NCBI RefSeq assembly: GCF_006345805.1
Contig: NC_043011.1
Span: forward strand, 26,796,464 to 26,860,463
DNA length: 64,000 nucleotides
Source of the DNA: Octopus sinensis
Taxonomy: Eukaryota
Direction: 5' to 3'
Shown: positions 1,782 to 62,185 of the stretch, one piece after another
How the letters are laid out: every line of letters begins with the position of its first letter
How positions within the stretch are numbered: position 1 is the stretch's first letter
The notes under the pieces: generated by a model
What the model was told of the DNA's origin: nothing
What the model saw: the letters and a program-made list of their open reading frames with translations, nothing else
Database searches by the model: none
Position numbers and translations under genes: made by a program

Positions 1782-3073
1782 CTACAGTAGAAATTAAAAG
1801 CAAAAATAGTGGTGTTACGAAAAAAAGTCCCGTTTTGTAAATATAAATTGACTAACAACTGTGATCAGCTGAGGTCAGTTTAACTTCTTAATGTGTATCT
1901 CATATCTCCCTCTTGCTATCTCTCCCCCACATCTCCTCATCACAGCCTTCACCCATCTCCCCACTGTATTCACTTTAACCCCCCACACACACACACACTT
2001 ACCGCAACCATCTGTTGACTGTCATGGTTCAGGGTGTCTGCAATAGGTGATCATACAGCCACTTGTTTGGACCACCTCAGGCAGTTCAACTAAGAATGCC
2101 TGGACAATTGAACAGGGTTATTGCTATATTATGTTATTTCTAGCACAATAGATATTGTCTCATATTTAATAATGGCATTTTTCTAAAATACATAAAACTA
2201 TATATATATATAGGTGCAGGCATGGTTCCAGGTTCAGTACTCATGACAGAACACCTTAGGCAAGTGCCTACTACTATACCCTCAGGCAAACTGAAGCCTT
2301 GTGAGTGGATTTGGTAGGCAGAAACTGAAAGAAGGTGGCGAGCTGGCAGAAATGCTTAGCCGTATTTCGTCTGCCATTACGTTCTGAGTTCAAATACCAC
2401 TGAGGTTGACTTTGTCTTTCATCCTTTCAGGGTCGATAAATTAAGTACCAGTTACGCACTGGGATCGATGTAATATATATATATATATATCATATATATA
2501 TATATAATCAAAATAAGCAACAAGGATATCCAGAGGTAATGCAGTACGATCATTTCATGCAACTCCATTTAATCGAACAATGCAATCATTACATCAATTT
2601 AAAATGTAGAGCAATCTTCAGTTGTACAAAGACATAGAATTTAATTAAATTAGAACAGATGGACACATTAGTATAATTATACCTAAAATTTCCAAGAAGT
2701 TAAGGAGATAAACAAAGAACATGCTGTCTCACTCCAGTTTAGAAGTTACTGAATTTTCAAGAAGATATACATTGTTACAGACTCTGCCTGTCACTGATTT
2801 TTTTGTTTTTATGGGGTCAGTTTTAATTTCTAGACTAGTTTATCAAATCCCCTGTATATCTAAGGCTGAGAGAACAGAGGGCAATATCTGTTAGGGGTAG
2901 GGCTGAGGGAGCAGACAGACATCATAGTTGGTATAGTCATAAAAATCAAGATTTATTAGAAGCAATATCATGAGGTTTAGTAAAGGAAAACTTAAAACAA
3001 GATGTTAGCTGATAATTAAGGGGGCCGCTCACTAGCAGACCATTGATATATATATATAATATATATATATAAT

Positions 3074-4128: not shown

Positions 4129-5439
4129 CTGAAATATAATGCATTTTTTTTTCTCATTTTCTTGGTCCATCCATTTGTTTATACATTTTCCCCTCTTTTC
4201 TTCCCTCTCAGTTTTATTCAATAGTAAACACGTGACTGTGCTGGTCTTAATAAATAATACATTGATAATATAAAAAGCATTAACATTATTATTATTATTA
4301 TTATTATTATTTTAATTATTAGGCAGCAAGCTGGCAGAATCATTAGCGTGTTGGGTGAAATGCTTACCGGTATTTTGCCCATCACTACATTCTGAGTTCA
4401 AATTCTGCTGAGACCGACTTTGCTTTTTATTCTTTCAGTGTTGATTAAATAAGTACCAGTTATGCACTGTGCCAATTGTGGAAAGGATTATTATGCACTG
4501 GGGTCAATGTAATTGACTTAATCTCCCCCCACCCCAAGTTGCCCTTGTAGCAAAAATTATTATTATTATTATTATTATCATTATTATTATTATTACTACT
4601 ACTACTAAGGTGGTGACCTGGCAGAATCATTAGCACAGCAGACAAAATGCTTAGCAGCATTTCATCTATCTTTGCATTCTGAGTTCCAATTCCACCAAAG
4701 TCAACTTTGCTTTTCATCCTTTTGGAGTTGATGAAATAAGTGCCAATTGTGTGCTGGGGTCAATGTAATAAACTAGCTCCCTCCTCCAAAATTTTAGGCC
4801 TTGTGCCAAAAAGTGTAATTACAGCAACATTCATCCTAAACCAGGACTGTCATGTTATGTTGGCAAACAATCTTTACTACAGAATATTTGCTGTAGCCCT
4901 TCTTTTATACCAAGACAAAACATGTAGATGATAATACTTCTAATCAGTTAAGATGAGAAACCATGAGAACCAGTGCCTGGTATTGCATCAGGGCATTTAA
5001 TATTATTCTTCCTATTGTTATTGTTGTTGTCATCATCCTCATCATCATCATCAGTTTATTCTGCTGAGGTCGAATTTGCCTTCCATCTTTTTAAGGTCGA
5101 TAAAGTACCAGTTGAGTACTGGGGTCAATATAATTAACTAGCTCACTCCCCACAAATTTCAAGCCTTGTACCTTTAGTAGAAAGGATCATTATTGTTGTT
5201 GTTGTTAACAACAACAACATGCATTAAAAAAAAGAATGCTGCATTTCAGGAAAGAAGTAGTAGAACATAAAGCCTTGTAGTATTTATATTTATATTTATC
5301 ATTAACTCTCTGAAAAGTCCTGAGGAGGTGGCAGTCATCTTTGATTCTATCCTTCCATCTCAATAGATTAAGTACCATTCATGTACTGGAGGTTAACATA
5401 GACTTCTATCTATGTTGAAAATCATTAATACAATTCTAA

Positions 5440-9166: not shown

Positions 9167-9976
9167 TATATATTTGTAAAAAATGAAGTTCGAAAATGCT
9201 GCTATATTATACAATTTTTAATTTTTATATATACATTATAACATGTTTCAGTTCCTGAAATGAACCTTATCAAAAAAAGTTATATATAAAAAAAGACAGC
9301 TCATGCCGTCAAACACAAGAAATTCATTTATAATACACAACGGAGTCAGACATCTTAGAGTTCATGTATAGTTGATATATAGTTTGAAGTAAGTTCATTC
9401 ATGCTATATGTTCAAAGTGTTCGATGCAGTGGCCCACGGTGGCGATACGTATTCAATACAAAAAACAGATCAAAGTGGTGGAAAGCAGTCAATACAGAAG
9501 ATTGATGTTTCCGAAAGAGCGAGGAATTCATTTTTACCTTAAGCAATTGTGATGACCCATGGTGGGTGTTCGCTGCGAACACCCACCATGGGTCATCACA
9601 ATTGCTTAAGGTAAAAATGAATTCCTCGCTCTTTCGGAAACATCAATCTTCTGTATTGACTGCTTTCCACCACTTTGATCTGTTTTTTGTATTGAATATG
9701 TATCGCCACCGTGGGCCACTGCATCGAACACTTTGAACATATAGCATGAATGAACTTACTTCAAACTATATATCAACTATACATGAACTCTAAGATGTCT
9801 GACTCCGTTGTGTATTATAAATGAATTTCTTGTGTTTGACGGCATGAGCTGTCTTTTTTTATATATAACTTTTTTTGATAAGGTTCATTTCAGGAACTGA
9901 AACATGTTATAATGTATATATAAAAATTAAAAATTGTATAATATAGCAGCATTTTCGAACTTCATTTTTTACAAAT

Positions 9977-9981
<5 letters not shown>
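9167..9981. repeat. 815-bp near-perfect palindrome (407-bp arms, 1-nt centre at 9574)
   Basis: Centre gtgttcgc-t-gcgaacac. The arms match base for base apart from one mismatch I noticed (gatacgtatt versus gatacatatt). TA-rich flanks. Confidence 0.95.
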
Positions 9982-12214: not shown

Positions 12215-12485
12215 TATATATATACATACATAAGACAGTAAGGTGTGATTTGAGGGAGATTTGGCTGCTATTTCTACCATGTCTAGCTGCCATGTAGGGG
12301 TCTCCCTCATAGGCTCATATATACATAGATAAGACAGTAAGGTGTGATTTGGGGGAAATTTAGCTGCTATTTCTACCAGGTCTAGCTACCATGTAGAGGT
12401 CCCCCTCATTGGCTCATATATATATACATACATAAGACAGTAAGGTGTGATTTGAGGGAGATTTGGCTGCTGTTTCTACCAGGTC
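12215..12485. repeat. ~100-bp tandem repeat, about 2.6 units
   Basis: taagacagtaaggtgtgatttg starts at 12231, 12330 and 12433. Confidence 0.9.
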
Positions 12486-12846
12486 TGTTAGGCCTTCTCA
12501 TGTAAACTCAAGCTTTCTCATGCCTTGAACATAAGACCAAAGCAGAGAATGTATTCTTTTATTCTTCTGCTTTTTCCAGCCATTGGTCTGTGGCCATGCT
12601 GGGGCAATGCCTTGAAGAATTGTAGTTTAATGAATCAACTCCAGTTTTATTTTTGTAAGCATTGTACTTATTCTATCCGTTCCTTTGTCAAACCACTAGG
12701 TGACAGGGATGTAAACAAACCAACATTCGTTGTCAAGCAGTGGTGGAGGACAATCACAAGCACAGACACGCACACACACACACATACATGCATACACATA
12801 TACACACATACATACATACATATATATATATGTGTGTATATATATA

Positions 12847-14405: not shown

Positions 14406-16429
14406 CTGTAAATCATCAATATATAGGGAACATTTTAAATGAGATTTCCTTTTGTATAAGTGTGCACATACACGGGTATGTGTGTGTGTGCATGTGTGTG
14501 TGTGCATATGCATGAGAAAAAGGGAAAGAGAGGATATTTATATACATACATACATACACACATCTCTCTCTCCTTCTCCCTCTCTTTCTCTCTGTATACT
14601 CTCTCTTTTACTCTTTTACTTGTTTCAGTCATTTGACTGTGGCCATGCTGGAGCACTGCCTTTAGTCGAGCAAATTGACCCTGGACTTATTTTTTGGAAG
14701 CCTAGTATTTATTCTATCATTCTGTTTTGCCAAACCGCTAAGTTACAGGGACGTAAACACACCACCATCAATTGTCAAGCGATGATGGGGGGGGGGGGAC
14801 AAACACATACACACATATAAATATACATATATATATACATATATACGACAGGCTTCTTTCAGTTTCCATCTACCAAATCCACTCACAAGGCTTTGGTTGG
14901 CCCATGTATGTGTATGTGTATACATCTTTCTCTGTACATACACATAGACACACTTATATGTATATGTATATCGAAAAGGTAATTATTTCTACGCCTGCTG
15001 CTATGTTTGTTGTTTTGTCTCATTTGGTCTAAAGTCGTATGACAACCACCGTTATATTATATTTTGTTTAACCGTTACCGTTTTCAATTTCGTTTTCATC
15101 TCTCGTATTTACATCCGTCTCGTGCGTTTACATTCGTGTCTTCTACCAAGAAATCTAATGCTTACAGCTTAGTTTTTTTTCTTGGGGCTGGCCGAGTTGG
15201 AGCAAATATCAGAATTGAACAGCCGAAATTTGCTATGATGATTCGGTGTCTGACTGAAGATTGAAGGCTTCGAATGATTTGTCTGTGTTCCGTGTTTGTC
15301 CCTTCCTGTATTTCACGTTCTTTATATATAAAACATTTATTCTTATATATATATATATATATGTAGGATCTGACAAGACATGTAAAGTTAAGTATTTTAT
15401 GGACATGAAACTCTGAGTTACCGAATGAACTGGTCATAATAATCTTTTTCTAAATATATATGTGTGTGTGCGTGTGTGTGTGGTGTGTGTGTGTGTGTAT
15501 CTCTCTCTATATATATGTGTGTGTGGTGTGTGTGTGTGTGTGTGGGTATATATATAGATATATACATGTACACATTCACAATGTGATGTGTGTGTGTGCG
15601 TGTGTGTGTGTATGTATAGATCTGTATGTGTTTGCTTGTATTATGAAAATATAAGTCTCTTATTCACCACCAAAGATAAGAACTTGCTCAGTAAAAATAA
15701 TTTTTTGGTAACAGGTGGGGCTATCTCATTAGCTTCCTGTAGATGTTGATTGATAGCAAGCTAAAGGACACCCCGTTGAGAAAGTGCTTAACAACCAATT
15801 CAATGAAATATTTAAGGTAGAATAGGCTGGAAAACAGCCAAAAGCCATGAATAAACACAGCAATAAAAATTGTATGATTGTGATTTCTGGTACTAAAATT
15901 AACAAACATGCTTGGTGGATAAGGTAGGTTTTTTTTTTTCTGTTTAGTTATTTTTCATTTCTTTGTTGACAGGGAGAGGGCATGGTGGTGGTGGTGGTGG
16001 TGGTGGTGGTGGTATAACAGGTATTATTATTTTTGGCGGAGAGCTGGCAGAATCGTTAGCACGCTGGGCGAAATGCTTTGTGGTATTTCGTCCGCCGCTG
16101 CGTTCTGAGTTCAAATTCCGCCGCCGAGGTCGACTTTACCTTTCATCCTTTTGAGGTCGATAAATTAAGTACCAGTTACACACTGGGGTCGATATAATCG
16201 ACTTAATCTGTGTGTCTATCCTTGTTTGTCCTCTCTGTGTTTAGCCCCTTGTGGGTAGTAAAGAAATAGGTATTATTCTTTATGCTGGTGGTGGTAGTAG
16301 TGGTGGTTTTGATTGGAATGGTGGTGGTGATGGTGGTGGTGGTGTGGTGGCAATGCTGGTGTTGATGATGTTGTTAGTGTTGTTGGAGACAGAAGTGCTA
16401 GTGGTGTTGTTGCTGCTATTGTCATTAAT

Positions 16430-25611: not shown

Positions 25612-26905
25612 GTTGGCAGAATGGTTAGCATGCCGGACAAAATACTTAACAGCATTTCTTCGTCTTTACTTTCTAAGTTGAATTTCCGCCGAGGTCAACT
25701 TTGTTTTTCATACTTTCGAGATCGATAAAATAGGTACCAGCTGAGCCCAGGGATCGATACAATCGACTAGCCCTTTCTCAATAAATATTCTCTTATAGAA
25801 GCAGGTACGACTGTGGTTAAGAAGCTCGCTTTGCAGTCACGTGGTTTTGCATTCAGTGCTACTGCGTGACTTCTGCTATCGCCTCGGACCGACTAATACC
25901 TGGTCGGTGAAATTGGTAGAGAGAAACTGCGGAAGGCCTCAATGTATATATGTGTGTGTGTGTAGAGGAAAGCGAAGTCCTCTATCTCTCACTGTTGTGC
26001 ACGCGAGGATAATAAAAATTACATTACTTTCAAACTCAATCGCGTATGTATTTGTCTTTTTTTGTATATATGTATGCCTACCTATTAATAAAATTGTTAT
26101 AATGAAAACTGATCCGTTTAGCCAACATTATGAATTGGAATAGTCTATATCCGCTCCGCGAATCAACTTTAATCTGATAGAGTAAAGCAAATGGGTTTGA
26201 AATTGAAGTCTTTTTGGCTCCAGCTCGGGCACAATCGAATGAAGTAAATAAATATATTTGTACACAGATTATATCATCTCATGTATTGATAAAAATCAAG
26301 GATAAAGTAAAAATGGAGAGGAATATTCAGTCTGTTCTTTGTTTGATTTACGGGGTGAGCGCGAACGCAGACCCCACACTTAGAAATAGCGCACCCGAGT
26401 CGCCCACATTTGGGGCGATCGCAAAGGTCAACCCAACCGGAGTGCAATGGAAGGGCCTCACTCTGGGAGAACCACCTAGCTGATCATGGTTTACCCCTGT
26501 GCCAGGTAAGTATGATTATGCTAGTTGACATTTTTATTATATACATTTAATGGCAAAATCATTGACTGATTTTATATAAACAATATATTCCATTCTATTA
26601 TTTACACTAAAAACAAATAAGAGAATTTATTAAGTATTTTATTTAGTTTATCATTTATTATTGTTTGATATAAGTACTTTTATAGAATTTGCTTTTCTTG
26701 TCTATATTTTACAAATTTAACAATTAAACTTTCTTTCGTAACTGATTTCTCCAAGAATACGTCATTATTCAAGGGAGGTAATTGAGCAATTTCTTCTATT
26801 AATGAGTTTTAGTAAATCTTTGTTGATGTTTTCATTCTTAATTTCCTCTTATCTTATCTTATGTTTGTTTGTTCTGTTATATTATCATAATTCAACACAG
26901 CTTAA
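25612..26905 (-). repeat. Left arm of the ~1.3-kb inverted duplication carrying U1
   Basis: Reverse complement matches 33338-34627 with only scattered substitutions and small indels. ORFs 25841..26143 and 34096..34398 differ at two residues. Confidence 0.95.
26351..26513 (-). ncRNA. U1: U1 spliceosomal snRNA, variant, copy 1
   Basis: Starts ATACTTACCTGG. U1A loop ATTGCACTCC, SLIII loop AAATGTGGG and terminal GCG-TTCG-CGC tetraloop are present. 163 nt, identical to copy 2. Confidence 0.95.
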
Positions 26906-33337: not shown

Positions 33338-34652
33338 TTAAGCTGTGTTGAATTATGATAATATATCAGAACAAACAAACATAAGATAAGAGGAAATTAA
33401 GAATGAAAACATCAACAAAGATTTACTAAAACTCATTAATAGAAGAAATTGCTCAATTACCTCCCTTGAATAATGACGTATTCTTGGAGAAATCAGTTAC
33501 GAAAGAAAGTTTAATTATTAAATTTGTAAAATATAGACAAGAAAAGCAAATTCTATAAAAGTACTTATATCAAACAATAATAAATGATGAACTGAATAAA
33601 ATACTTAATAAATTCTCTTATTTGTTTTTAGTGTAAATAATAGAATGGAATATATTGTTTATATAAAATCAGTCAATGATTTTGCCATTAAATGTATATA
33701 ATAAAAATGTCAACTAGCATAATCATACTTACCTGGCACAGGGGTAAACCATGATCAGCTAGGTGGTTCTCCCAGAGTGAGGCCCTTCCATTGCACTCCG
33801 GTTGGGTTGACCTTTGCGATCGCCCCAAATGTGGGCGACTCGGGTGCGCTATTTCTAAGTGTGGGGTCTGCGTTCGCGCTCACCCCGTAAATCAAACAAA
33901 GAACAGACTGAATATTCCCTCTCCATTTTTACTTTATCCTTGATTTTATCAATACATGAGATGATATAATCTGTGTACAAATATATTTATTTACTTCATT
34001 CGATTGTGCCCGAGCTGGAGCCAAAAAGACTTCAATTTCAAACCCATTTGCTTTACTCTAATCAGATTAAAGTTGATTCGCGGAGCGGATATAGACTATT
34101 CCAATTCATAATGTTGGCTAAACGGATCAGTTTTCATTATAACAATTTTATTAATAGGTAGGCATACATATGTACAAAAAAAGACAAATACATACGCGAT
34201 TGAGTTTGAAAGTAATGTAATTTTTATTATCCTCGCGTGCACAACAGTGAGAGATAGAGGACTTCGCTTTCCTTTACACACACACACATATATACATTGA
34301 GGCCTTCCGCAGTTTCTCTCTACCAATTTCACCGACCAGGTATTAGTCGGTCCGAGGCGATAGCAGAAGTCACGCAGTAGCACTGAATGCAAAACCACGT
34401 GACTGCAAAGCGAGCTTCTTAACCACAGTCGTACCTGCTTCTATAAGAGAATATTTATTGAGAAAGGGCTAGTCGATTGTATCGATCCCTGGGCTCAGCT
34501 GGTACCTATTCCATCGATCTCGAAAGTATGAAAAACAAAGTTGACCTCGGCGGAAATTCAACTTAGAAAGTAAAGACGAAGAAATGCTGTTAAGTATTTT
34601 GTCCGGCATGCTAACCATTCTGCCAACAGTTTTTGCCCAGAGCTCGAGAAAA
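33338..34652 (+). repeat. Right arm of the inverted duplication carrying U1
   Basis: Mirror of 25612-26905. The last 25 nt (34628-34652) additionally mirror 25034-25060. Confidence 0.95.
33725..33887 (+). ncRNA. U1: U1 spliceosomal snRNA, variant, copy 2
   Basis: Same hallmarks as copy 1. Followed by AAAGAACAGA, which resembles the 3' half of an snRNA 3' box. Confidence 0.95.
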
Positions 34653-39331: not shown

Positions 39332-39591
39332 ACCTGAAGATCTATTACACAGACTTACGTACGTACATGCGCATATATCTAAGTGGACACAGCTTTTCAA
39401 TTTCCTTAACGCATTCATTTTGCATTGCGGAGACTTGTGGTTTAGTGGTTAGGGTACTGGACTCATGATAGCAAGATTGTGGTTTCGATTCCTGAAACAG
39501 GCGACTCGTATTATTGCTGCTGGCAAAATGAGTAATCCTGCGACGGATCGGTGTCCCGTCCAGGTGAGGAATATATACGCCATGAGGGCGG

Positions 39592-39980
39592 TGAGCTGGC
39601 AGAGACGTTATCGCGCCGGGCGAAATGCGTAGCGGTATTTCGTCTGCCGTTACGTTCTGAGTTCAAATTCCGCCGAGGTCGACTTTGTCTTTCATCCTTT
39701 CGGGGTCGATAAATTAAGTACCAGTTACGCACTGGGTCGATATAATCGACTTAGTCCGTTTGTATGTCCTTGTTTGTCCTCTCTGTGTTTAGCCCCTTGT
39801 GGGTAGTAAATAAATAGGTATTTCGTCTGTCGTTACGTTCTGAGTTCAAATTCCGCCGAGGTCGACTTTGCCTTTCATCCTTTCGGGGTCGATTAAATAA
39901 GTACCAGTTACACACTGGAGTCGATGTAATCAGCTTAATCCCTTTGTCTATCCTTGTTTGTCTCCCCTATGTTTAGACCC
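39592..39980 (+). mobile_element. Tandem tRNA-derived SINEs, family B (other copies at about 2337, 4322, 4611, 8400-, 16047, 25605, 34460-, 47820, 49060- and 59061-)
   Basis: Recurring gagctggcagaa...ctgagttcaaattccgccgaggtcgactttgcctttcatcctttcggggtcgat. Confidence 0.9.
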
Positions 39981-44299: not shown

Positions 44300-47140
44300 G
44301 CTAACGAAGTATCAAAGAATACAGAAAAAGTTCCCCCTCCCGGCGACAACATGGAGGTCGTCGAAAAGGAGGCGGAATTTCAAGTTATTCCCCGGAAAGA
44401 AATATTGTGTCCCCATCTCCCTCCCAACCCACAACCCCAACAAAAAACGCACCATAACTTTGAATCTCGCCCCTTCACCCACACGACCCCTGTAGACAGA
44501 CCTGCGTTTGTTAAGTATAATGACAGAGATGCGTACTTACAGGAAATTGTAAGTAAACATCATTTAACTAAACGTTTCAAAGGCGCGAACTACTCCCGAA
44601 TAGAAGAAAAACTTTTCAGGCAACTGAAAGATAGAAGACTGGAGGACATCCACAGGTTAAGTGAGATGCCCAAATTAATAGACCCGCCGCCAGAAACCGA
44701 CGAAGAAAGAGAAAAGAACAAGGAGGAGGGGAGTTCAATAACACTAAGAACGATCCCCTTTTTGCGTTTGAATGTCTGTACTGAACTTGGTTTGTTTAAA
44801 TGTGCGTGGCCTGAGTTCGAAGTGGGAGCAAACTTGTTTCTGCGACGACCTCAAGTCACATGGCTTGAGACTACTAGCCTTCTCGGCTCTCCTGAATGGC
44901 TATGAGAAAATCATGTCTCCTAGCCAAACAGGAGGCCGAAGAGGGGTAGTGGTCTTGCTCCGAAAAAGCTTGGCTCTGCAGACAAGTACAGTCTTTGTAG
45001 ACCCAGAAGGTGGGCTAGTCGTTCTCAACTTAAAGTACAGAGATAAGGCTTTCAGATTGGTGGGCGTTTATGCGCCGAGTTATAAAAACAAACAGACTGA
45101 TTTCTATCGACGCCTAGAGACATTGAAGACATTAGTGGTGTCAGGAGATTTTAACGCAATCCTGGATGCACGCCAGGACTGTGTTGGCTCAATCCACAAG
45201 AAGAAAAACTTACGCCTCACCGATCTGCTTAAGCGGTTTCAGCTGGCAGATCGTTACAGACTTGTTCACTCGAGCGTCCCAGTGTGGACCTGGAGTAACG
45301 ACGACGAGTCGTTCAGATCTTATATAGATAGAATAATAATTCGTACTAGCGATAAGTCTAGTTTTAATTATTCAGAGTTTGTTCTTGTCTCCTACACGGA
45401 TCACAAACTAGTGACGTGTAGGATGAACATAGAGAAAGTACTTAGACAGAGATCCGGCTACTGAAAGCTAAACAAGACTATTTTGTTTTGTGAGGCATAC
45501 CATAGTCCGATTAAGGAGTTAGCCACGAGGGCATTAACCGGCACGAGTCGATTAAATTTAGCCAGGAGCTAAGTTCAGATAGGACTAGAATAGAAAGGGA
45601 TCTAGTTAAGGACTTAGAAACAGCTTTAAGTTTGGGCTATGTATTCCAAGTTTTGACAATGAGATCGCCCTTGGACCGACACCTCAGAGCCAAATACGAG
45701 GTATGTATAGTTCAGGTTAAAATACGTACATTAGGCTGTGAAAGAATTAACGTTGCCGGGTGGGCCCGCACGTTAGAGACCCATAATGGGAATGATTCCA
45801 CTATTGGGTCTTTGGTCGATGAACAGCAGTATTTGATCGAAGGACAAGATGAGATGCGTGAGGTCTATTACAAGCATTTTGTCGAGTTGTTCGGGATGGG
45901 CGAGGCGCTGGACTGTGGAGAGTCACTTCGCGACGTCCTGCCTGGTGGCCCGCGTCTTTCGACACGAGAGAAGCTGAGTGCTGGGAATGACTGATCACGG
46001 CTGAGGAGGCCATGAAGGTATTGTCCGAGTGCACCCGGGAGAAGTCGTTGGGACTTGATGGTCTACTCTATGAGTTTTTCAAAAGTATGCCTGACTTGTT
46101 CGGGCACCTACTGTCCAGGGTTTATGCCAACTAGCAGCAGAATAGGAGAATTCCCAATGCTGCTAGCCGGGTGGTGGTAACGCTGATCAGAAAGGACTCG
46201 AACAAGGGGAACATTATAAGTAACTTTAGGTCCATAACTCTGTTAAACACAGAGTTAAAGATTTTGGCCAAGGTGCTAGCAAAGAGGTTGGCATGGGTCG
46301 TGGGTAGCCTTGTTGGGGAGGCGCAAACAAGCGTCATCCCCGGCAGGACGATACCCGACAATCCCCATCTCATACCCTACATCTTAGAGCGGGTGGATAA
46401 AATTTCTGGCAAAGGTGGGGCACTGGTACATTTAGATCAGTCTAAAGCGTTCGATAGGGTTGACCATCGGTACCTGGCGGCGGTTCTCGGGGCGGCCAAG
46501 CTGGATCGCTGCTCTTTACAACAACATCGAGTCTATCGTCCGGATGAATGGTTTCTTTTCGAAACCGTTCGCCAGGGATGTCCCCTGTCTCTGCTTTTGT
46601 ATGTGTTGGCTCTTGAGCCGTTACTGCGAAGGTTGGAGGCTTTAGTGGGCATTTCGCATGATCTAAGCTATGGAAGAACTGTAACCGCGTATGCGGATGA
46701 CACCACCATCATCGTGTCGGATGAAGGGCAGCTATCTTGTGTAGAAAACGTTATCAGAAGATACGAAGCAGTGGCAAGAGCAAAAACTAACCAGGATAAG
46801 CCAGTCGGCTTGCAATTCGGTACCTGGAGGGGCAAGTCGATGTCGTCCAATAACGTCGTGGGGCGTACGACGGAAGGTCCGGTTAAGATGCTGGGGGTAT
46901 GGTTTGGTCTGGATCTCCAGGTAGAGAAGAATTAGAATGAAGTCACAAGCAAGGTAACTGTCCTAACCCAGATTTGGTCTGGAAGGACGTTATCACTGCT
47001 AGAGATGACGGAGGTGGAGCAGATGTACATAGCATCTGTTATCACCTACTGCCTGACCGTCGTGCCCTGCTCCGATTCGTAGCTGAGCAAGTTGGAGCGT
47101 CTCCTCTTCTGCTTTTTTGTGGAGAAGGGCACCACTTGTA
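44300..47140 (+). mobile_element. Tx1/L1-clade LINE: ORF1 C-terminus and degenerate ORF2 (endonuclease and RT), 3'-truncated
   Basis: CLNVRGL, VYAPS, SGDFNA, SYIDRI and TDHKLV endonuclease motifs; NFRSITLLNTELKILAK, LDQSKAFDRVDH, RQGCPLS and YADD RT motifs. Confidence 0.92.
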
Positions 47141-49377
47141 AGTTTTAATACGTCTTACAAACTAAGAATATTTTGTACACGTTTACTTCTCGTTAAACAT
47201 ATTATGACTGAAAGGGCAATAATTTTCCGCTGGTTTATCATCATTGTTGATTAATTTGTATATTTTAAGCTTCTCCCCCCGGTAAATATTAGATGATAAT
47301 TCTTTAGTAGTAGAGGAATATACCAAAATGGAAAGAATAGCACATGCAGCTTACGAAAAACGAGTTTGGATTATCTAATATCATAACAGTTTCATAAGAG
47401 AGAATTATTAATTTTATAAAAGTTTGAAGCTTTTTCTGTTACCATTCCTTCACCACCCAAGAACTTTTTCACGATTTGATGCAACACTTCAGCAAGAGTT
47501 TTGTAACAGTGAAGGTGCATGGTTTAATGTTTAAAGTATTCGGCTCTCGATCGTAAGGTCGTGAGATCGATACCCGACGGCGCATTGTGTCCTTGAACTA
47601 GACACTTTATTTCATGTTGCTCCAGTTCACTCAGTTGGCAAAACGAGTAGTACCTGTATTTCAAATGGCCACCTTGTCACATCCTGTGTCACGCTGAATA
47701 TCCCTGCGAACTACGTTAAGGGTACACATTTTTGCCCGTTGATATTTTTTTTTTACGAGCAGGTTATTGTTCATTGTTATCTAAAACACACATACAAACA
47801 TTTCACAAGTAATATCAGTTGGCTGAATTGTTAGCACACCGGGCAAAATGCTTAGCGGTACTTCGTCCATCTTAACGTTCTGAGTTCAAATTTGACCGAG
47901 GTCGACTTTGCCTTTCATCCTCTCGGGATCGATAAAATAAGTACAAGTTGAGCACTGGGGGGTCGATGTAATCGACTTCACCCCTTTCCCGTAATTGTTG
48001 GTATTGTGCCAAAATTTAAAGCCAATATTAATTGGCTTCTCCAAAATTAAAGAGACTTCGGTGCATAAACAGAAATGTTTCTATCCACTGATACTATCAT
48101 GTTAACCCTAACAAAGATTTTATTTTAAAATGTGTTTAAAATATAAATATTGTATCTGGTTGAAATATTAAATTTTTAAGAAAAATCACACCGTTCTATA
48201 TAGTCGATCGTCAAATTTGCTATTCACTGTGAACTCACAAAGGCTCCAAGGGTATTGTCGCTCAGGTTAAGAATCACAGTTTTAGATGAAAAGGTCCATC
48301 CTGAAAGTCCATTCATTTTGTTCTCTCAGGGCCGGTTTTAAGCCAATAAAATAGATTAATTCAAATTGGGCCCCGCGCACACACTCGACTTGTAATAAAA
48401 CATTAAAACCTTCATATGAGTTCTCAATTTTTTATATATTTTTTGTTGTTGCTAATAGTGGAGCCCCAAGCCCTCAACGGTTTTTACCTGGGACTGGTGT
48501 ACTACACGAAATATAATACACCAATCTTCGGTTTCTGTAGAGTAGAGGGTTTAATTGGGTCTAATTCTCTAATCAGATTCCGTACTTCCGAGCGCCAGCC
48601 CTGTCTCCTCCTAACGGCATATCAATGTATTGAAACTCACCAGCTTTACCTTATAATTTATGCCGATACGGACCACCGTCAGTTTCTTCGGATTCTGTTT
48701 CTCTTTTTATGCGCAATTAATTTATTTTTCAACTTATTTAGATTACTGTTTTTGCTATTTACTATCAAGCAGTACATTTGTTGTGTTACATTGAATGACA
48801 CCTGACAGATGGGAAAACTTAAACAATTTTTAAGGACAGACTGGCGTAAGTTTTATAGGTTTGTCAATAGGCAAATATACTTTAACGTCTCTAACTTACT
48901 CGATCGATTCTATACACTTACTCTATTAAAAATAAAATTGTAACTAGTTAAACGAACTACTACTACTACTTTCTTTATTGGTCACAAAGGCTGCAAATAT
49001 AACCACTAAAAACCAATAACAATAGTCGGGGAAACGCCACGCAGGCAACCCTGGTTTCAAATTATGACACAAGGCTAGCAATTTCAAGGGAGGGAGATAG
49101 TCGATTACACCTACCCCACTGCTCAACTGGGTCTTATTTTGTCGACTCCGAGAGGATGAAAAGTGGAATTTGAACAAAGAATATTTTGAGTCCGAAGGTA
49201 GACCGCCACGTATTTTTTTCCGACACTCTAACAATACTGGTAGCTCGCTGCCTCAGCAAAGATAATAATAATAATGAACAAAGAAAGAGAGCATAAGGCT
49301 TTAAATGTAAAATTAGAATTTTATTGACAGCTTGTATGAATCGATAGTCAATAGCTCCTTTAGTGTCAATTAATCAG

Positions 49378-60828: not shown

Positions 60829-61209
60829 ATTCTCCTCTGTTTTCAATTATTTGAAGTCTTCCTGTAAAGAAGGAACTGTTTTCTGACGAAGACACAAAGC
60901 TCCATCAGGGGAATGTAGATAACAACAACAATGTCAAATTTTGAACTTGAGAACAGTCTTCAATATTTTTATTGTTCCACTTACAAATTATATTTGTAAT
61001 GTGTGTGATAAGTTGGTTGATTTCTTTTTCTGGAAACACTATCCTATCCAGATTGTTACTTTGGCCTTTACTCACAAAATCAACTGTACCAATTATATTA
61101 TTGGTATAGATGTAAATATATCATCTGGATATTGAAGCAGTTGTCCACAGTTACCCTTTTTCCTTTTTGATCTTCAAAGAGGACACTCAAACATGCACAC
61201 ATATATCTA

Positions 61210-61519
61210 CACACACATATATATATGGATATATAGAAGTATATATATGTATGTATATATATATGTTTGTATATATAGAAGTATATATATATGTATGTAT
61301 GTATATATATATGTCTTTATATAAGTATATATATGTATATATTTATGTATGTATATATATATATATATATGTCTTTATATAAGTATATATATGTATATAT
61401 TTATATATGTATGTATATATGCATATATATATGTATGTATATATGTATATATGCATATATATATGTATGTATATATATATATATATGTATATATGTATAT
61501 ATGCATATATATATGTATG

Positions 61520-61554
<35 letters not shown>

Positions 61555-62000
61555 ATATGCATATATATATGTATGTATATATTTATATATATATATGTAT
61601 ATATGCATATGTATGTATATATGTATATATGCATATATATATAGAGATATATGTATATATGCATATATATATATGTATATATGCATATATATATATATGT
61701 ATATATGCATATATATATATATGTATATATGCATATATATATGTATGTATATATATATATATGCATATATATATATGCATATATATATATATGCATATAT
61801 ATTATGCATATATATATATATATATATGTATATTATATATATATAATATATATATATTATATATATATATATGTATGTATATATATAGCATATATATATA
61901 TGCATATATATATATATATATGCATATATATATATGCATATATATATATATATGCATATATATATATGCATATATATATATATATATGCATATATATATA

Positions 62001-62047
<47 letters not shown>

Positions 62048-62072
62048 ATATATGTATATATATGTATATTCA
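61210..62072. repeat. ~860-bp compound (TA)/(TATG)/(TATGCA) simple repeat
   Basis: Directly visible. It is the source of the YIYI ORFs. Confidence 0.95.
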
Positions 62073-62185
62073 TCTGAATGCTAAAAGGTTAGGAATTGTG
62101 AATAGATGAGGTTAATAGTTTCCAGATATGTTTGCATGAAATACATTAACTTGAGATAATATTCTTAATATTCTCTTTATCTTAG

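What the first reader, a model, noticed from the sequence alone, without database searches (positions are those of the whole stretch)
33725..33887. Structurally conserved U1 snRNA variant with a rewired U1-70K loop and a non-canonical Sm site
Seen: the 5' end AUACUUACCUG, the U1A loop AUUGCACUCC and the SLIV UUCG loop are canonical. The stems pair despite differing from human U1: helix H GCAC/GUGC, SLIII UCGCCC/GGGCGA where human has UUUCCC/GGGAAA, and SLIV GGGGU/ACCCC. Two protein-binding elements differ. The SLI loop is GAUCAGCUAG (33753-33762) rather than GAUCACGAAG, and the Sm region reads CUAUUUCUAAG (33849-33859) rather than UAAUUU(G/C/U)UGG. Established: the 70K loop and the Sm site are near invariant in major metazoan U1, and expressed U1 variants exist in Drosophila and human. 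Inference: changes concentrated in two protein-binding sites, with pairing retained, look more like a specialised snRNP (altered 70K partner, or a role in telescripting or alternative splicing) than random decay.
Basis: partly seen in the sequence, partly recalled or inferred. Interest (0 to 1): 0.82.

Follow-up and report, generated by a model that had tools for sequence, protein, structure and literature searches.

The report
Lineage-typical U1 snRNA gene pair
This is one of two identical, intact genes for U1 spliceosomal RNA; its two odd protein-binding motifs recur in U1 genes from other samples, so it is more likely its lineage's normal U1 than a specialised variant.

Summary
The two lie in a ~1.27 kb inverted duplication.

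Fourteen spurious ORFs in public assemblies turned out to be U1 genes. With one further U1 they gave 11 distinct comparison sequences.
- The Sm region GCGCUAUUUCUAAGUGUGGGG is identical in four other distinct U1 genes, which differ elsewhere, partly by compensatory stem changes.
- The stem-loop I loop GAUCAGCUAG recurs in three others, one of them a tandem array with a canonical Sm site.
- Loop positions 5-8 vary freely across these U1 genes. In the human structure the three changed bases are held by stacking or phosphate contacts.
- The Sm core AUUUNU is invariant.

So the motifs are shared and selected features, not private changes. The gene is not a decayed pseudogene, and nothing supports a specialised snRNP.

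I could not see the rest of the genome or name the relatives' organisms. An old Sm-variant paralogue beside a canonical U1 therefore stays open, at roughly one in five.

The parts
33725..33888 (+). U1 snRNA gene, copy B (164 nt)
   Evidence: Rfam RF00003, 129 bits, E 2.5e-32, model 1-166/166
26350..26513 (-). U1 snRNA gene, copy A, identical to copy B
   Evidence: Rfam RF00003, 129 bits; sequence identity checked
33358..34627 (+). Arm B of the inverted duplication that carries U1 with about 365 nt upstream and about 740 nt downstream
   Evidence: the repeat finder I1 and I2, 98-99% complementary; 12 difference events, none inside U1
25612..26880 (-). Arm A of the inverted duplication
33725..33735 (+). 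5' end AUACUUACCUG, the 5' splice-site recognition sequence
   Evidence: Invariant in all 13 U1 sequences compared
33753..33762 (+). Stem-loop I apical loop GAUCAGCUAG (U1-70K site). It differs from human only at the equivalents of C33 G34 A35.
   Evidence: contact description from PMC4383343
33790..33799 (+). Stem-loop II loop AUUGCACUCC (U1A site), canonical
33850..33858 (+). Sm nonamer UAUUUCUAA, aligned to human A125-G133 AAUUUGUGG. The core AUUUNU is kept; positions 1, 6, 8 and 9 differ.
   Evidence: the surrounding 21 nt are identical in L001, L005 and L006, and L004 has one change just upstream of them
33873..33876 (+). Stem-loop IV UUCG tetraloop
33898..33907 (+). 3'-box-like element AAAGAACAGA, +10 to +19 after the gene end
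   Evidence: The same kind of element (AAAR N2-3 AGAY) lies at the same place in L001, L004, L005 and L006. BLAST alignments to relatives extend about 20 nt into the 3' flank but only 0-4 nt into the 5' flank.
33695..33702 (+). TATA-like element TATATAAT at -30 to -23 (candidate promoter element)
   Evidence: A TATA-like element at -30/-29 is also upstream of the L001 and L004 U1 genes. The flanks are AT-rich, so this is weak evidence.
33671..33680 (+). Candidate proximal sequence element AGTCAATGAT at -54 to -45
   Evidence: Similar 10-mers at -57 in L003 and -58 in L001. By my estimate this is not beyond chance for AT-rich flanks, so it is inconclusive.

Best explanation
The finding is one of two recently duplicated, functional genes for the ordinary U1 spliceosomal snRNA of this organism.

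Inferred from family membership, not shown here:
- The RNA is transcribed from its own upstream promoter and cut downstream at a 3'-box-like element.
- It is assembled with an Sm ring on the core AUUUCU, and with U1-70K on stem-loop I and U1A on stem-loop II.
- It then pairs through ACUUACCUG with 5' splice sites.

The two motifs that differ from human U1 are lineage-typical states, not private changes of a special copy.
- The loop changes fall on the three apical bases, which vary freely among the invertebrate-type U1 genes compared. In the human complex these bases are held by stacking or phosphate contacts.
- U1 also has a U1-70K/stem-loop I dependent route to the SMN complex. That route makes a non-consensus Sm site tolerable.
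For: Shown:
- Full-length Rfam U1 match, twice and identical.
- On 12 distinct U1 sequences the canonical structure gives 89.3% of cells paired. Fifteen pairs change on both sides, against 9.1 +/- 1.5 in shuffles (0 of 500 reach it) and at most 5 when the partners are slid.
- The 21 nt around the Sm site are identical in the window, L001, L005 and L006 (L004 has one change just upstream). These sequences differ from the window at 8-22 of 141 other columns, including compensatory swaps in stem-loop I.
- GAUCAGCUAG is also in L001 and L002, and L004 has GAUCAGCUAC. L002 is a five-copy tandem array.
- Among the 13 sequences the invariant loop positions are G A U C and the ninth A. The invariant Sm positions are A U U U. 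U. The window keeps all of them.
- A 3'-box-like element is shared with L001, L004, L005 and L006.

From papers:
- C33 and G34 are stacked between Arg191 and Lys138, which bind their phosphates. A29-A36 closes the loop. C31 and A32 sit on the RNP phenylalanines. The sixth nonamer base (G130) is not in a pocket (PMC4383343).
- U1 has a U1-70K dependent assembly route (PMC5131779 citing So et al. 2016).
Against: - Only 64 kb of the genome is visible, so a larger family of canonical-Sm U1 genes elsewhere cannot be excluded.
- The organisms behind L001-L017 are unknown. They are metagenome or MAG contigs, so 'lineage' cannot be named or bounded.
- With loop and Sm columns removed, the tree is unresolved and does not recover the Sm-variant set as one clade: 4 changes needed, and the AU test does not reject one clade (p 0.15). 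Canonical-Sm L003 (14 differences) and L002 (15) are nearer to the window than Sm-variant L005 (21) and L006 (22).
- The adenine 5' of the heptamer that Gemin5 prefers is a U here.
- There are no expression data.
- Zero differences in U1 between the two copies is not significant (P = 0.17).
Confidence: 0.65

Rival explanations
1. The Sm-variant U1 is an old paralogue that lives beside a canonical-Sm U1 in the same genomes. It forms a snRNP with an altered core or an altered assembly route, which is essentially the reader's idea restricted to the Sm site. Stem-loop I would then track the lineage's U1-70K in both paralogues.
For: - Characters are mosaic. The window shares its loop and nearly all of stem-loop IV with canonical-Sm L002 (1 difference), and its whole stem-loop II with canonical-Sm L003 (0 of 43).
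- L006 and L003 have the same loop, GAUCCUCAAG, but different Sm types.
- The tree without loop and Sm columns needs 4 changes of Sm state.
- The variant Sm stretch does not vary at all (0 of 14 columns, against 41 of 151 elsewhere, p 0.02). The canonical set varies at 6 of 14. That would fit a specifically recognised element.
- Expressed variant U1 genes exist in human (PMC3561869 and PMC5159530, abstracts).
Against: - No sample or contig holds both types.
- Both copies in the window are the variant type.
- The AU test does not reject a single origin (p 0.15), and a 164-nt constrained RNA is prone to homoplasy.
- The invariance test is partly circular, because the set was defined by that motif.
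- Loop states differ by 3 even between the sister sequences L003 and L008, so shared loops are weak markers.
Confidence: 0.2
2. The two copies are inactive U1 pseudogenes that were duplicated recently.
For: - The Rfam score (129 bits) is lower than for most relatives (118-156).
- The Sm site departs from consensus.
- Identity of the two copies is explained by the youth of the duplication alone (P = 0.17).
Against: - The gene is full length with all helices intact.
- There is no truncation, and no A-rich tail after the gene, as a retro-copy would show.
- The 3'-box-like element is conserved with relatives.
- The same deviant motifs are kept in other U1 genes that show compensatory stem changes, which needs selection.
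Confidence: 0.05
3. The Sm element works like the U7-type site and recruits Lsm10/Lsm11 in place of SmD1/SmD2.
For: Like the U7 consensus AAUUUGUCUAG, the element lacks the G at the eighth nonamer position and is followed by AG (PMC12360213).
Against: - By my position-by-position comparison it matches the U7 consensus no better than the spliceosomal consensus AAUUUUUGGAG: 5 of 11 ungapped for each.
- It lacks the GUCUAG signature.
- L017 has a canonical first adenine but also lacks the G at nonamer position 8 (AAUUUUUUA). Loss of that G is therefore not special to this site.
Confidence: 0.03

Closest known systems
U1 spliceosomal snRNA (Rfam RF00003), for example human U1
   Same: - 5' end AUACUUACCUG.
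- Helix H plus four stem-loops.
- U1A loop AUUGCAC.
- Loop bases G28 A29 U30 C31 A32 A36 G37 of stem-loop I.
- Sm core AUUU.U.
- UUCG tetraloop in stem-loop IV.
- Same length, 164 nt.
   Different: - Loop apex GCU in place of CGA.
- Nonamer UAUUUCUAA in place of AAUUUGUGG.
- Several stems differ from human, mostly with pairing kept (two non-standard pairs each in stem-loops I and II).
- TATA-like element at -30.
Human variant U1 snRNAs (vU1; PMC3561869, PMC5159530, PMC10870369)
   Same: A U1-like gene with base changes in protein-binding sites and an intact overall fold.
   Different: vU1 genes are defined by co-existence with a dominant canonical U1 family and by differential expression. Neither could be tested here. 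The deviant motifs recur in the U1 genes of other samples, which is not how vU1 genes behave.
U1 genes recovered here from public assemblies (L001, L004, L005, L006; L002)
   Same: - L001 differs at 8 of 164 positions and shares both motifs.
- L004 shares both, with one loop base changed.
- L005 and L006 share the Sm region.
- L002 shares the loop and stem-loop IV.
   Different: The upstream flanks are unrelated and base composition differs. The source organisms are unknown.
U7 snRNA Sm site (AAUUUGUCUAG; PMC12360213)
   Same: A non-consensus Sm element without the G at nonamer position 8.
   Different: No GUCUAG, and it sits in a complete U1 body. It is no closer to U7 than to the spliceosomal consensus.

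Membership tests
U1 spliceosomal snRNA (RF00003) | 5' end ACUUACCUG complementary to 5' splice sites | tested here: met
   AUACUUACCUG at 33725-33735; invariant in all 13 sequences
U1 spliceosomal snRNA (RF00003) | Helix H plus four stem-loops (covariance model above the gathering score) | tested here: met
   129 bits against 69.5. The model's structure evaluates to -40.2 kcal/mol on this sequence. Covariation among 12 sequences beats both the shuffled and the slid controls.
U1 spliceosomal snRNA (RF00003) | Stem-loop II loop AUUGCAC for U1A | tested here: met
   AUUGCACUCC at 33790-33799
U1 spliceosomal snRNA (RF00003) | Stem-loop I ten-base loop for U1-70K | tested here: met
   The loop length and the bases invariant across the 13 sequences (G A U C and the ninth A), plus the near-invariant tenth G, are present. 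The three apical bases differ from human but lie within the variation seen. Actual binding was not tested.
U1 spliceosomal snRNA (RF00003) | Single-stranded Sm site between helix H and stem-loop IV | tested here: inconclusive
   The position and the core AUUU.U are met. The flanking A (position 1) and G (position 8) of the nonamer are not met. Sm-ring assembly cannot be tested here.
U1 spliceosomal snRNA (RF00003) | snRNA-type gene signals (upstream PSE, downstream 3' box) | tested here: inconclusive
   A 3'-box-like AAAGAACAGA lies at +10 and is shared with relatives. The PSE candidate is not beyond chance and the TATA-like element is weak evidence.
U1 spliceosomal snRNA (RF00003) | Expressed, TMG-capped and Sm-bound RNA | not testable with these tools
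   No expression or immunoprecipitation data are available.
Variant U1 (vU1-like specialised paralogue) | Co-exists with a dominant canonical U1 family in the same genome | not testable with these tools
   Only 64 kb is visible, and both U1 genes in it are the same type.
Variant U1 (vU1-like specialised paralogue) | Changes are private to the variant and are not the lineage's norm | tested here: not met
   The Sm region is shared with L001, L004, L005 and L006. The loop is shared with L001, L002 and, with one base changed, L004.
U1 pseudogene | Truncation, broken helices, loss of flanking signals, or retro-copy marks | tested here: not met
   Full-length match and intact helices. A 3'-box-like element is present. 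No A-rich tail follows the gene.
U7-type Sm site | Consensus AAUUUGUCUAG | tested here: not met
   UAUUUCUAAGU matches 5 of 11 positions, the same as it matches the spliceosomal consensus (sequence, consensus).

The most novel reading that the evidence does not exclude
A group of animals, the window's organism included, carries two old classes of U1. One has a canonical Sm site. The other has the frozen element GCGCUAUUUCUAAGUGUGGGG, which nucleates a different core or uses a different assembly route. Stem-loop I evolves in step in both classes with the lineage's U1-70K. The mosaic sharing of loop, stem-loop II and stem-loop IV between variant-Sm and canonical-Sm sequences would then be the trace of that co-evolution, or of gene conversion.
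Probability: 0.15. Interest if true: 0.65.

Novelty: new member of a known kind. Interest (0 to 1): 0.25.

Why it matters
As it stands this is an annotation result: two good U1 genes, not pseudogenes and not a demonstrated variant.

Two modest points go beyond annotation.
- The apex of the U1-70K loop is much more variable among these U1 genes than the vertebrate, insect and yeast picture suggests. That fits the crystal structure, where those bases make no described base-specific contact.
- A non-consensus Sm nonamer (UAUUUCUAA) is kept unchanged in five distinct U1 genes. This would make a natural test case for how much of the Sm consensus U1 really needs, given its U1-70K dependent assembly route.

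If whole-genome data showed this type beside a canonical U1 family, it would be a natural example of an snRNP-core variant and would deserve real attention.

Tried and rejected
- Plain MFE folding does not give the cloverleaf: -58.5 kcal/mol, z -0.59, with the 5' end paired to the loop. This is uninformative, so I used the covariance model and covariation instead.
- JGI metagenome scan for the 19-mer around the variant Sm site: 3 hits, none a U1.
- GTDB genome scan for 5' end plus loop: 0 hits. The stem-loop III pattern gave one U1 contaminant in a Sulfurovum MAG (L017).
- IMG/VR scans: 0 hits.
- Peptide search with the reverse-strand open frame of U1: no candidates.
- Literature on cephalopod, octopus or mollusc U1: nothing relevant. 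The assembly accession of L003 appears in no paper.
- Naming the window's organism: the best named relative of its LINE reverse transcriptase is a cuttlefish protein at 46% identity. That is only weak support for 'cephalopod'.
- Naming the relatives' organisms failed. The contigs share nothing with the window beyond U1 and about 20-45 nt of 3' flank.
- A tree of the U1 sequences is unresolved: no starred branch, and the AU tests for a single origin of the Sm variant (p 0.15) and of the AGCU loop (p 0.17) do not reject.
- A sensitive Rfam pass over the window found no further snRNA or U1 fragment, only microsatellite pseudo-hits.
- A U7-like reading of the Sm site was considered and set aside.

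Full report

Yes. Rfam's U1 model (RF00003) matches the stretch end to end at 129 bits against a gathering score of 69.5, E 2.5e-32.

A second U1 gene lies at 26350-26513 on the minus strand and is identical base for base. The two genes sit head to head in an inverted duplication of about 1.27 kb (25612-26880 and 33358-34627, 98-99% identical).

The arms differ by 12 events outside U1 and by none inside it. At that divergence, zero differences in 164 nt is expected 17% of the time. The identity of the two genes therefore says only that the duplication is young. A sensitive Rfam pass found no other snRNA gene or U1 fragment in the window.

**2. Getting comparison sequences**

No tool searches eukaryotic genomes for RNA genes. 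However, one reading frame of this U1 is open for 54 codons. I searched that artificial peptide against the protein collection. It returned 14 spurious proteins, ORFs that gene callers had placed over U1 genes in metagenome, MAG and read-assembly contigs.

I fetched the contigs for ten of them (L001-L013). Rfam confirmed a full-length U1 in every one, at 118-156 bits. A pattern scan of GTDB genomes added one more, a eukaryotic contaminant in a Sulfurovum MAG (L017).

That gives 11 distinct comparison U1 genes besides the window's. Its numbering agrees with Kondo et al. 2015.

**3. What the comparison shows (alignments)**

| Sequence | Stem-loop I loop | Sm nonamer |
|---|---|---|
| window, L001 | GAUCAGCUAG | UAUUUCUAA |
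| L004 | GAUCAGCUAC | UAUUUCUAA |
| L005 | GAUCCAUAAG | UAUUUCUAA |
| L006 / L007 | GAUCCUCAAG | UAUUUCUAA |
| L002 (five identical copies, tandem array, period about 2.2 kb) | GAUCAGCUAG | AAUUUAUGU |
| L008 | GAUCCAUCAG | AAUUUUUGU |
| L003 | GAUCCUCAAG | AAUUUUUGU |
| L009 | GAUCACCAAG | AAUUUCUGU |
| L010 | GAUCCGCAAG | AAUUUAUGG |
| L011-L013 | GAUCAUGAAG | AAUUUUUGU |
| L017 | GAUCCGCAAG | AAUUUUUUA |
| human | GAUCACGAAG | AAUUUGUGG |

Three things follow.

- The loop apex (positions 5-8) is not near invariant in this sample. Only G, A, U, C and the ninth A are invariant, and the tenth base is G in all but one.
- The window's Sm region is not private. The 21 nt GCGCUAUUUCUAAGUGUGGGG are identical in L001, L005 and L006, and L004 has one change just upstream. 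These are different genes. They differ from the window at 8-22 of the 141 columns outside the loop and Sm region. Some of those differences are compensatory, such as ACCAU/GUGGU against ACGGU/GCCGU or ACCUU/GAGGU in stem-loop I.
- The window's loop is not private either. It recurs in L001 and L002, and with one changed base in L004.

On the 12-sequence alignment the canonical structure is well supported. 89.3% of cells are paired. Fifteen pairs change on both sides, against 9.1 +/- 1.5 in column shuffles (0 of 500 reach the observed value) and at most 5 when partners are slid by 1-3 columns. These are genes under selection for the U1 fold.

**4. How serious are the two deviations?**

*The stem-loop I loop.* In the human U1 snRNP crystal structure (PMC4383343):

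- G28 is flipped out and stacked.
- A29 and A36 close the loop with a trans pair.
- U30 packs on Leu175 and hydrogen-bonds.
- C31 and A32 stack on the two RNP phenylalanines.
- C33 and G34 stack on each other between Arg191 and Lys138, which salt-bridge to their phosphates.
- A35 stacks on A36.

The window keeps G28, A29, U30, C31, A32, A36 and G37. It changes only C33 G34 A35 to G C U. These are the positions with no base-specific contact described, and the same positions vary among the relatives. 'Rewired' overstates it.

*The Sm site.* The same paper assigns the first seven nonamer bases one to one to SmF-E-G-D3-B-D1-D2. It notes that the sixth base (G130) is not accommodated in SmD1's pocket. 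G132 and G133 lie in outer pockets.

The window changes positions 1 (A to U), 6 (G to C), 8 (G to A) and 9 (G to A). Positions 6, 8 and 9 vary among the relatives, and L017 also lacks the G at position 8. Position 1 is A in every canonical sequence and U only in the variant set.

[quoted passage not shown] An adenine just 5' of the heptamer helps, and that is lost here (PMC5131779; PMC12360213). U1 also has a separate route to the SMN complex that depends on U1-70K and stem-loop I (PMC5131779 citing So et al. 2016). This gives a plausible reason why U1 can carry a non-consensus Sm site.

**5. Gene signals**

Downstream, AAAGAACAGA lies at +10 to +19. It resembles the snRNA 3' box (my knowledge: GTTT N0-3 AAAR NN AGA, 9-19 nt after the gene). 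L001, L004, L005 and L006 have an equivalent element at the same place. BLAST alignments between the window and every relative run about 20 nt into the 3' flank (about 45 nt for L005) but only 0-4 nt into the 5' flank.

Upstream, a TATA-like TATATAAT sits at -30 to -23, with counterparts at -30 and -29 in L001 and L004. A candidate proximal element, AGTCAATGAT, lies at -54 and resembles 10-mers at -57 in L003 and -58 in L001. In AT-rich flanks I estimate such matches are expected by chance, so I treat the promoter elements as candidates only. There is no truncation and no A-rich tail after the gene.

**6. Best explanation**

This is a functional, lineage-typical U1 gene, present as a recent inverted pair. 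The mechanism (transcription, 3'-box cleavage, Sm and U1-70K/U1A assembly, 5' splice-site pairing) is inferred from membership in the family. None of it was shown here. Confidence is 0.65.

**7. What keeps the variant idea alive**

I could not see the rest of the genome, and I could not name the organisms behind the relatives. The only taxonomic hint for the window itself is a decayed LINE whose reverse transcriptase is closest, among named proteins, to a cuttlefish protein at 46% identity.

The characters are also mosaic. Outside the loop and Sm columns, the window is closer to canonical-Sm L003 (14 differences, stem-loop II identical) and L002 (15 differences, stem-loop IV one difference) than to Sm-variant L005 (21) and L006 (22). 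A maximum-likelihood tree without those columns is unresolved and needs four changes of Sm state, although an AU test does not reject a single origin (p 0.15).

The variant Sm stretch shows no variation (0 of 14 columns against 41 of 151 elsewhere, p 0.02). The canonical set varies at 6 of 14. This test is partly circular, because the set was defined by the motif.

An old Sm-variant paralogue living beside a canonical U1 would explain the mosaic. So would homoplasy in a short, constrained RNA. I give the paralogue reading about 0.2. Pseudogene (0.05) and U7-like ring (0.03) are unlikely for the reasons listed under the rival explanations.

**8. Comparison with what is known, and novelty**

This is a member of the U1 family by every feature I could test, with the Sm flanks as the one open feature. 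It is not shown to be a vU1-like variant. The one testable defining feature of that class, changes private to the variant, is not met.

It is a new member of a known kind. Interest is low to modest, at 0.25. It would rise sharply only if genome-wide data showed this type co-existing with a canonical family.

**9. An unexplained detail**

The loop variant AGCUAG extends complementarity between the U1 5' end and the 3' half of stem-loop I (ACCUGGC with GCUAGGU). The duplex is -13.0 kcal/mol in the window and -10.4 in L001 and L002, against -3.5 to -7.7 for other loop types. It also dominates the MFE fold. L004 has lost it, and three bases pairing by chance is about a 1 in 16 event, so I record it without building on it.

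Noticed in passing
window 26350-26513 (-): A second U1 gene, identical to the reported one, head to head with it in a 1.27 kb inverted duplication (25612-26880 / 33358-34627).
   Followed up: yes
window 9167-9981: A perfect palindrome: two 407-nt arms, 100% complementary, 1 nt apart (I3). It could be a foldback element or an assembly artefact.
   Followed up: no
window 2314-2463, 4322-4471, 4609-4758, 16035-16123, 39587-39736, 47810-47959: A repeat family that looks tRNA-derived (SINE-like), six to seven copies at 62-88% identity (D12/D13).
   Followed up: no
window 44351-46935 (+): A decayed LINE with endonuclease-like and reverse-transcriptase ORFs broken by frameshifts. The best named relative is a reverse transcriptase of the cuttlefish Acanthosepion pharaonis at 46% identity.
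   Followed up: partly
window 61100-62100 and many shorter sites: Long TA/TG/CATA microsatellites. They produce sub-threshold Rfam microRNA pseudo-hits.
   Followed up: partly
window 33731-33737 with 33758-33764: The AGCUAG loop variant makes the U1 5' end complementary to the 3' half of stem-loop I. The duplex is -13.0 kcal/mol, against -3.5 to -7.7 for other loop types, and it appears in the MFE fold. L001 and L002 share it; L004 has lost it.
   Followed up: partly
window 33915-33935; L001, L005, L002 downstream flanks: A C-rich patch followed by a T run about 30-45 nt after the U1 gene recurs in the window, L001, L005 and L002. It may be a termination or processing element.
   Followed up: no
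L011 1-3191, L012, L013: Marine metagenome contigs (Tara Oceans project in two cases) carry a compact cluster of 5S rRNA, U5, U2, U4 and U1 genes, in that order, within about 3 kb.
   Followed up: no
L002 10045-19051: A head-to-tail array of at least five identical U1 genes with a period of about 2.2 kb, on a 190 kb contig of an ENA assembly.
   Followed up: partly
window 12218-12518: Three tandem copies of a 99-nt unit (D18).
   Followed up: no
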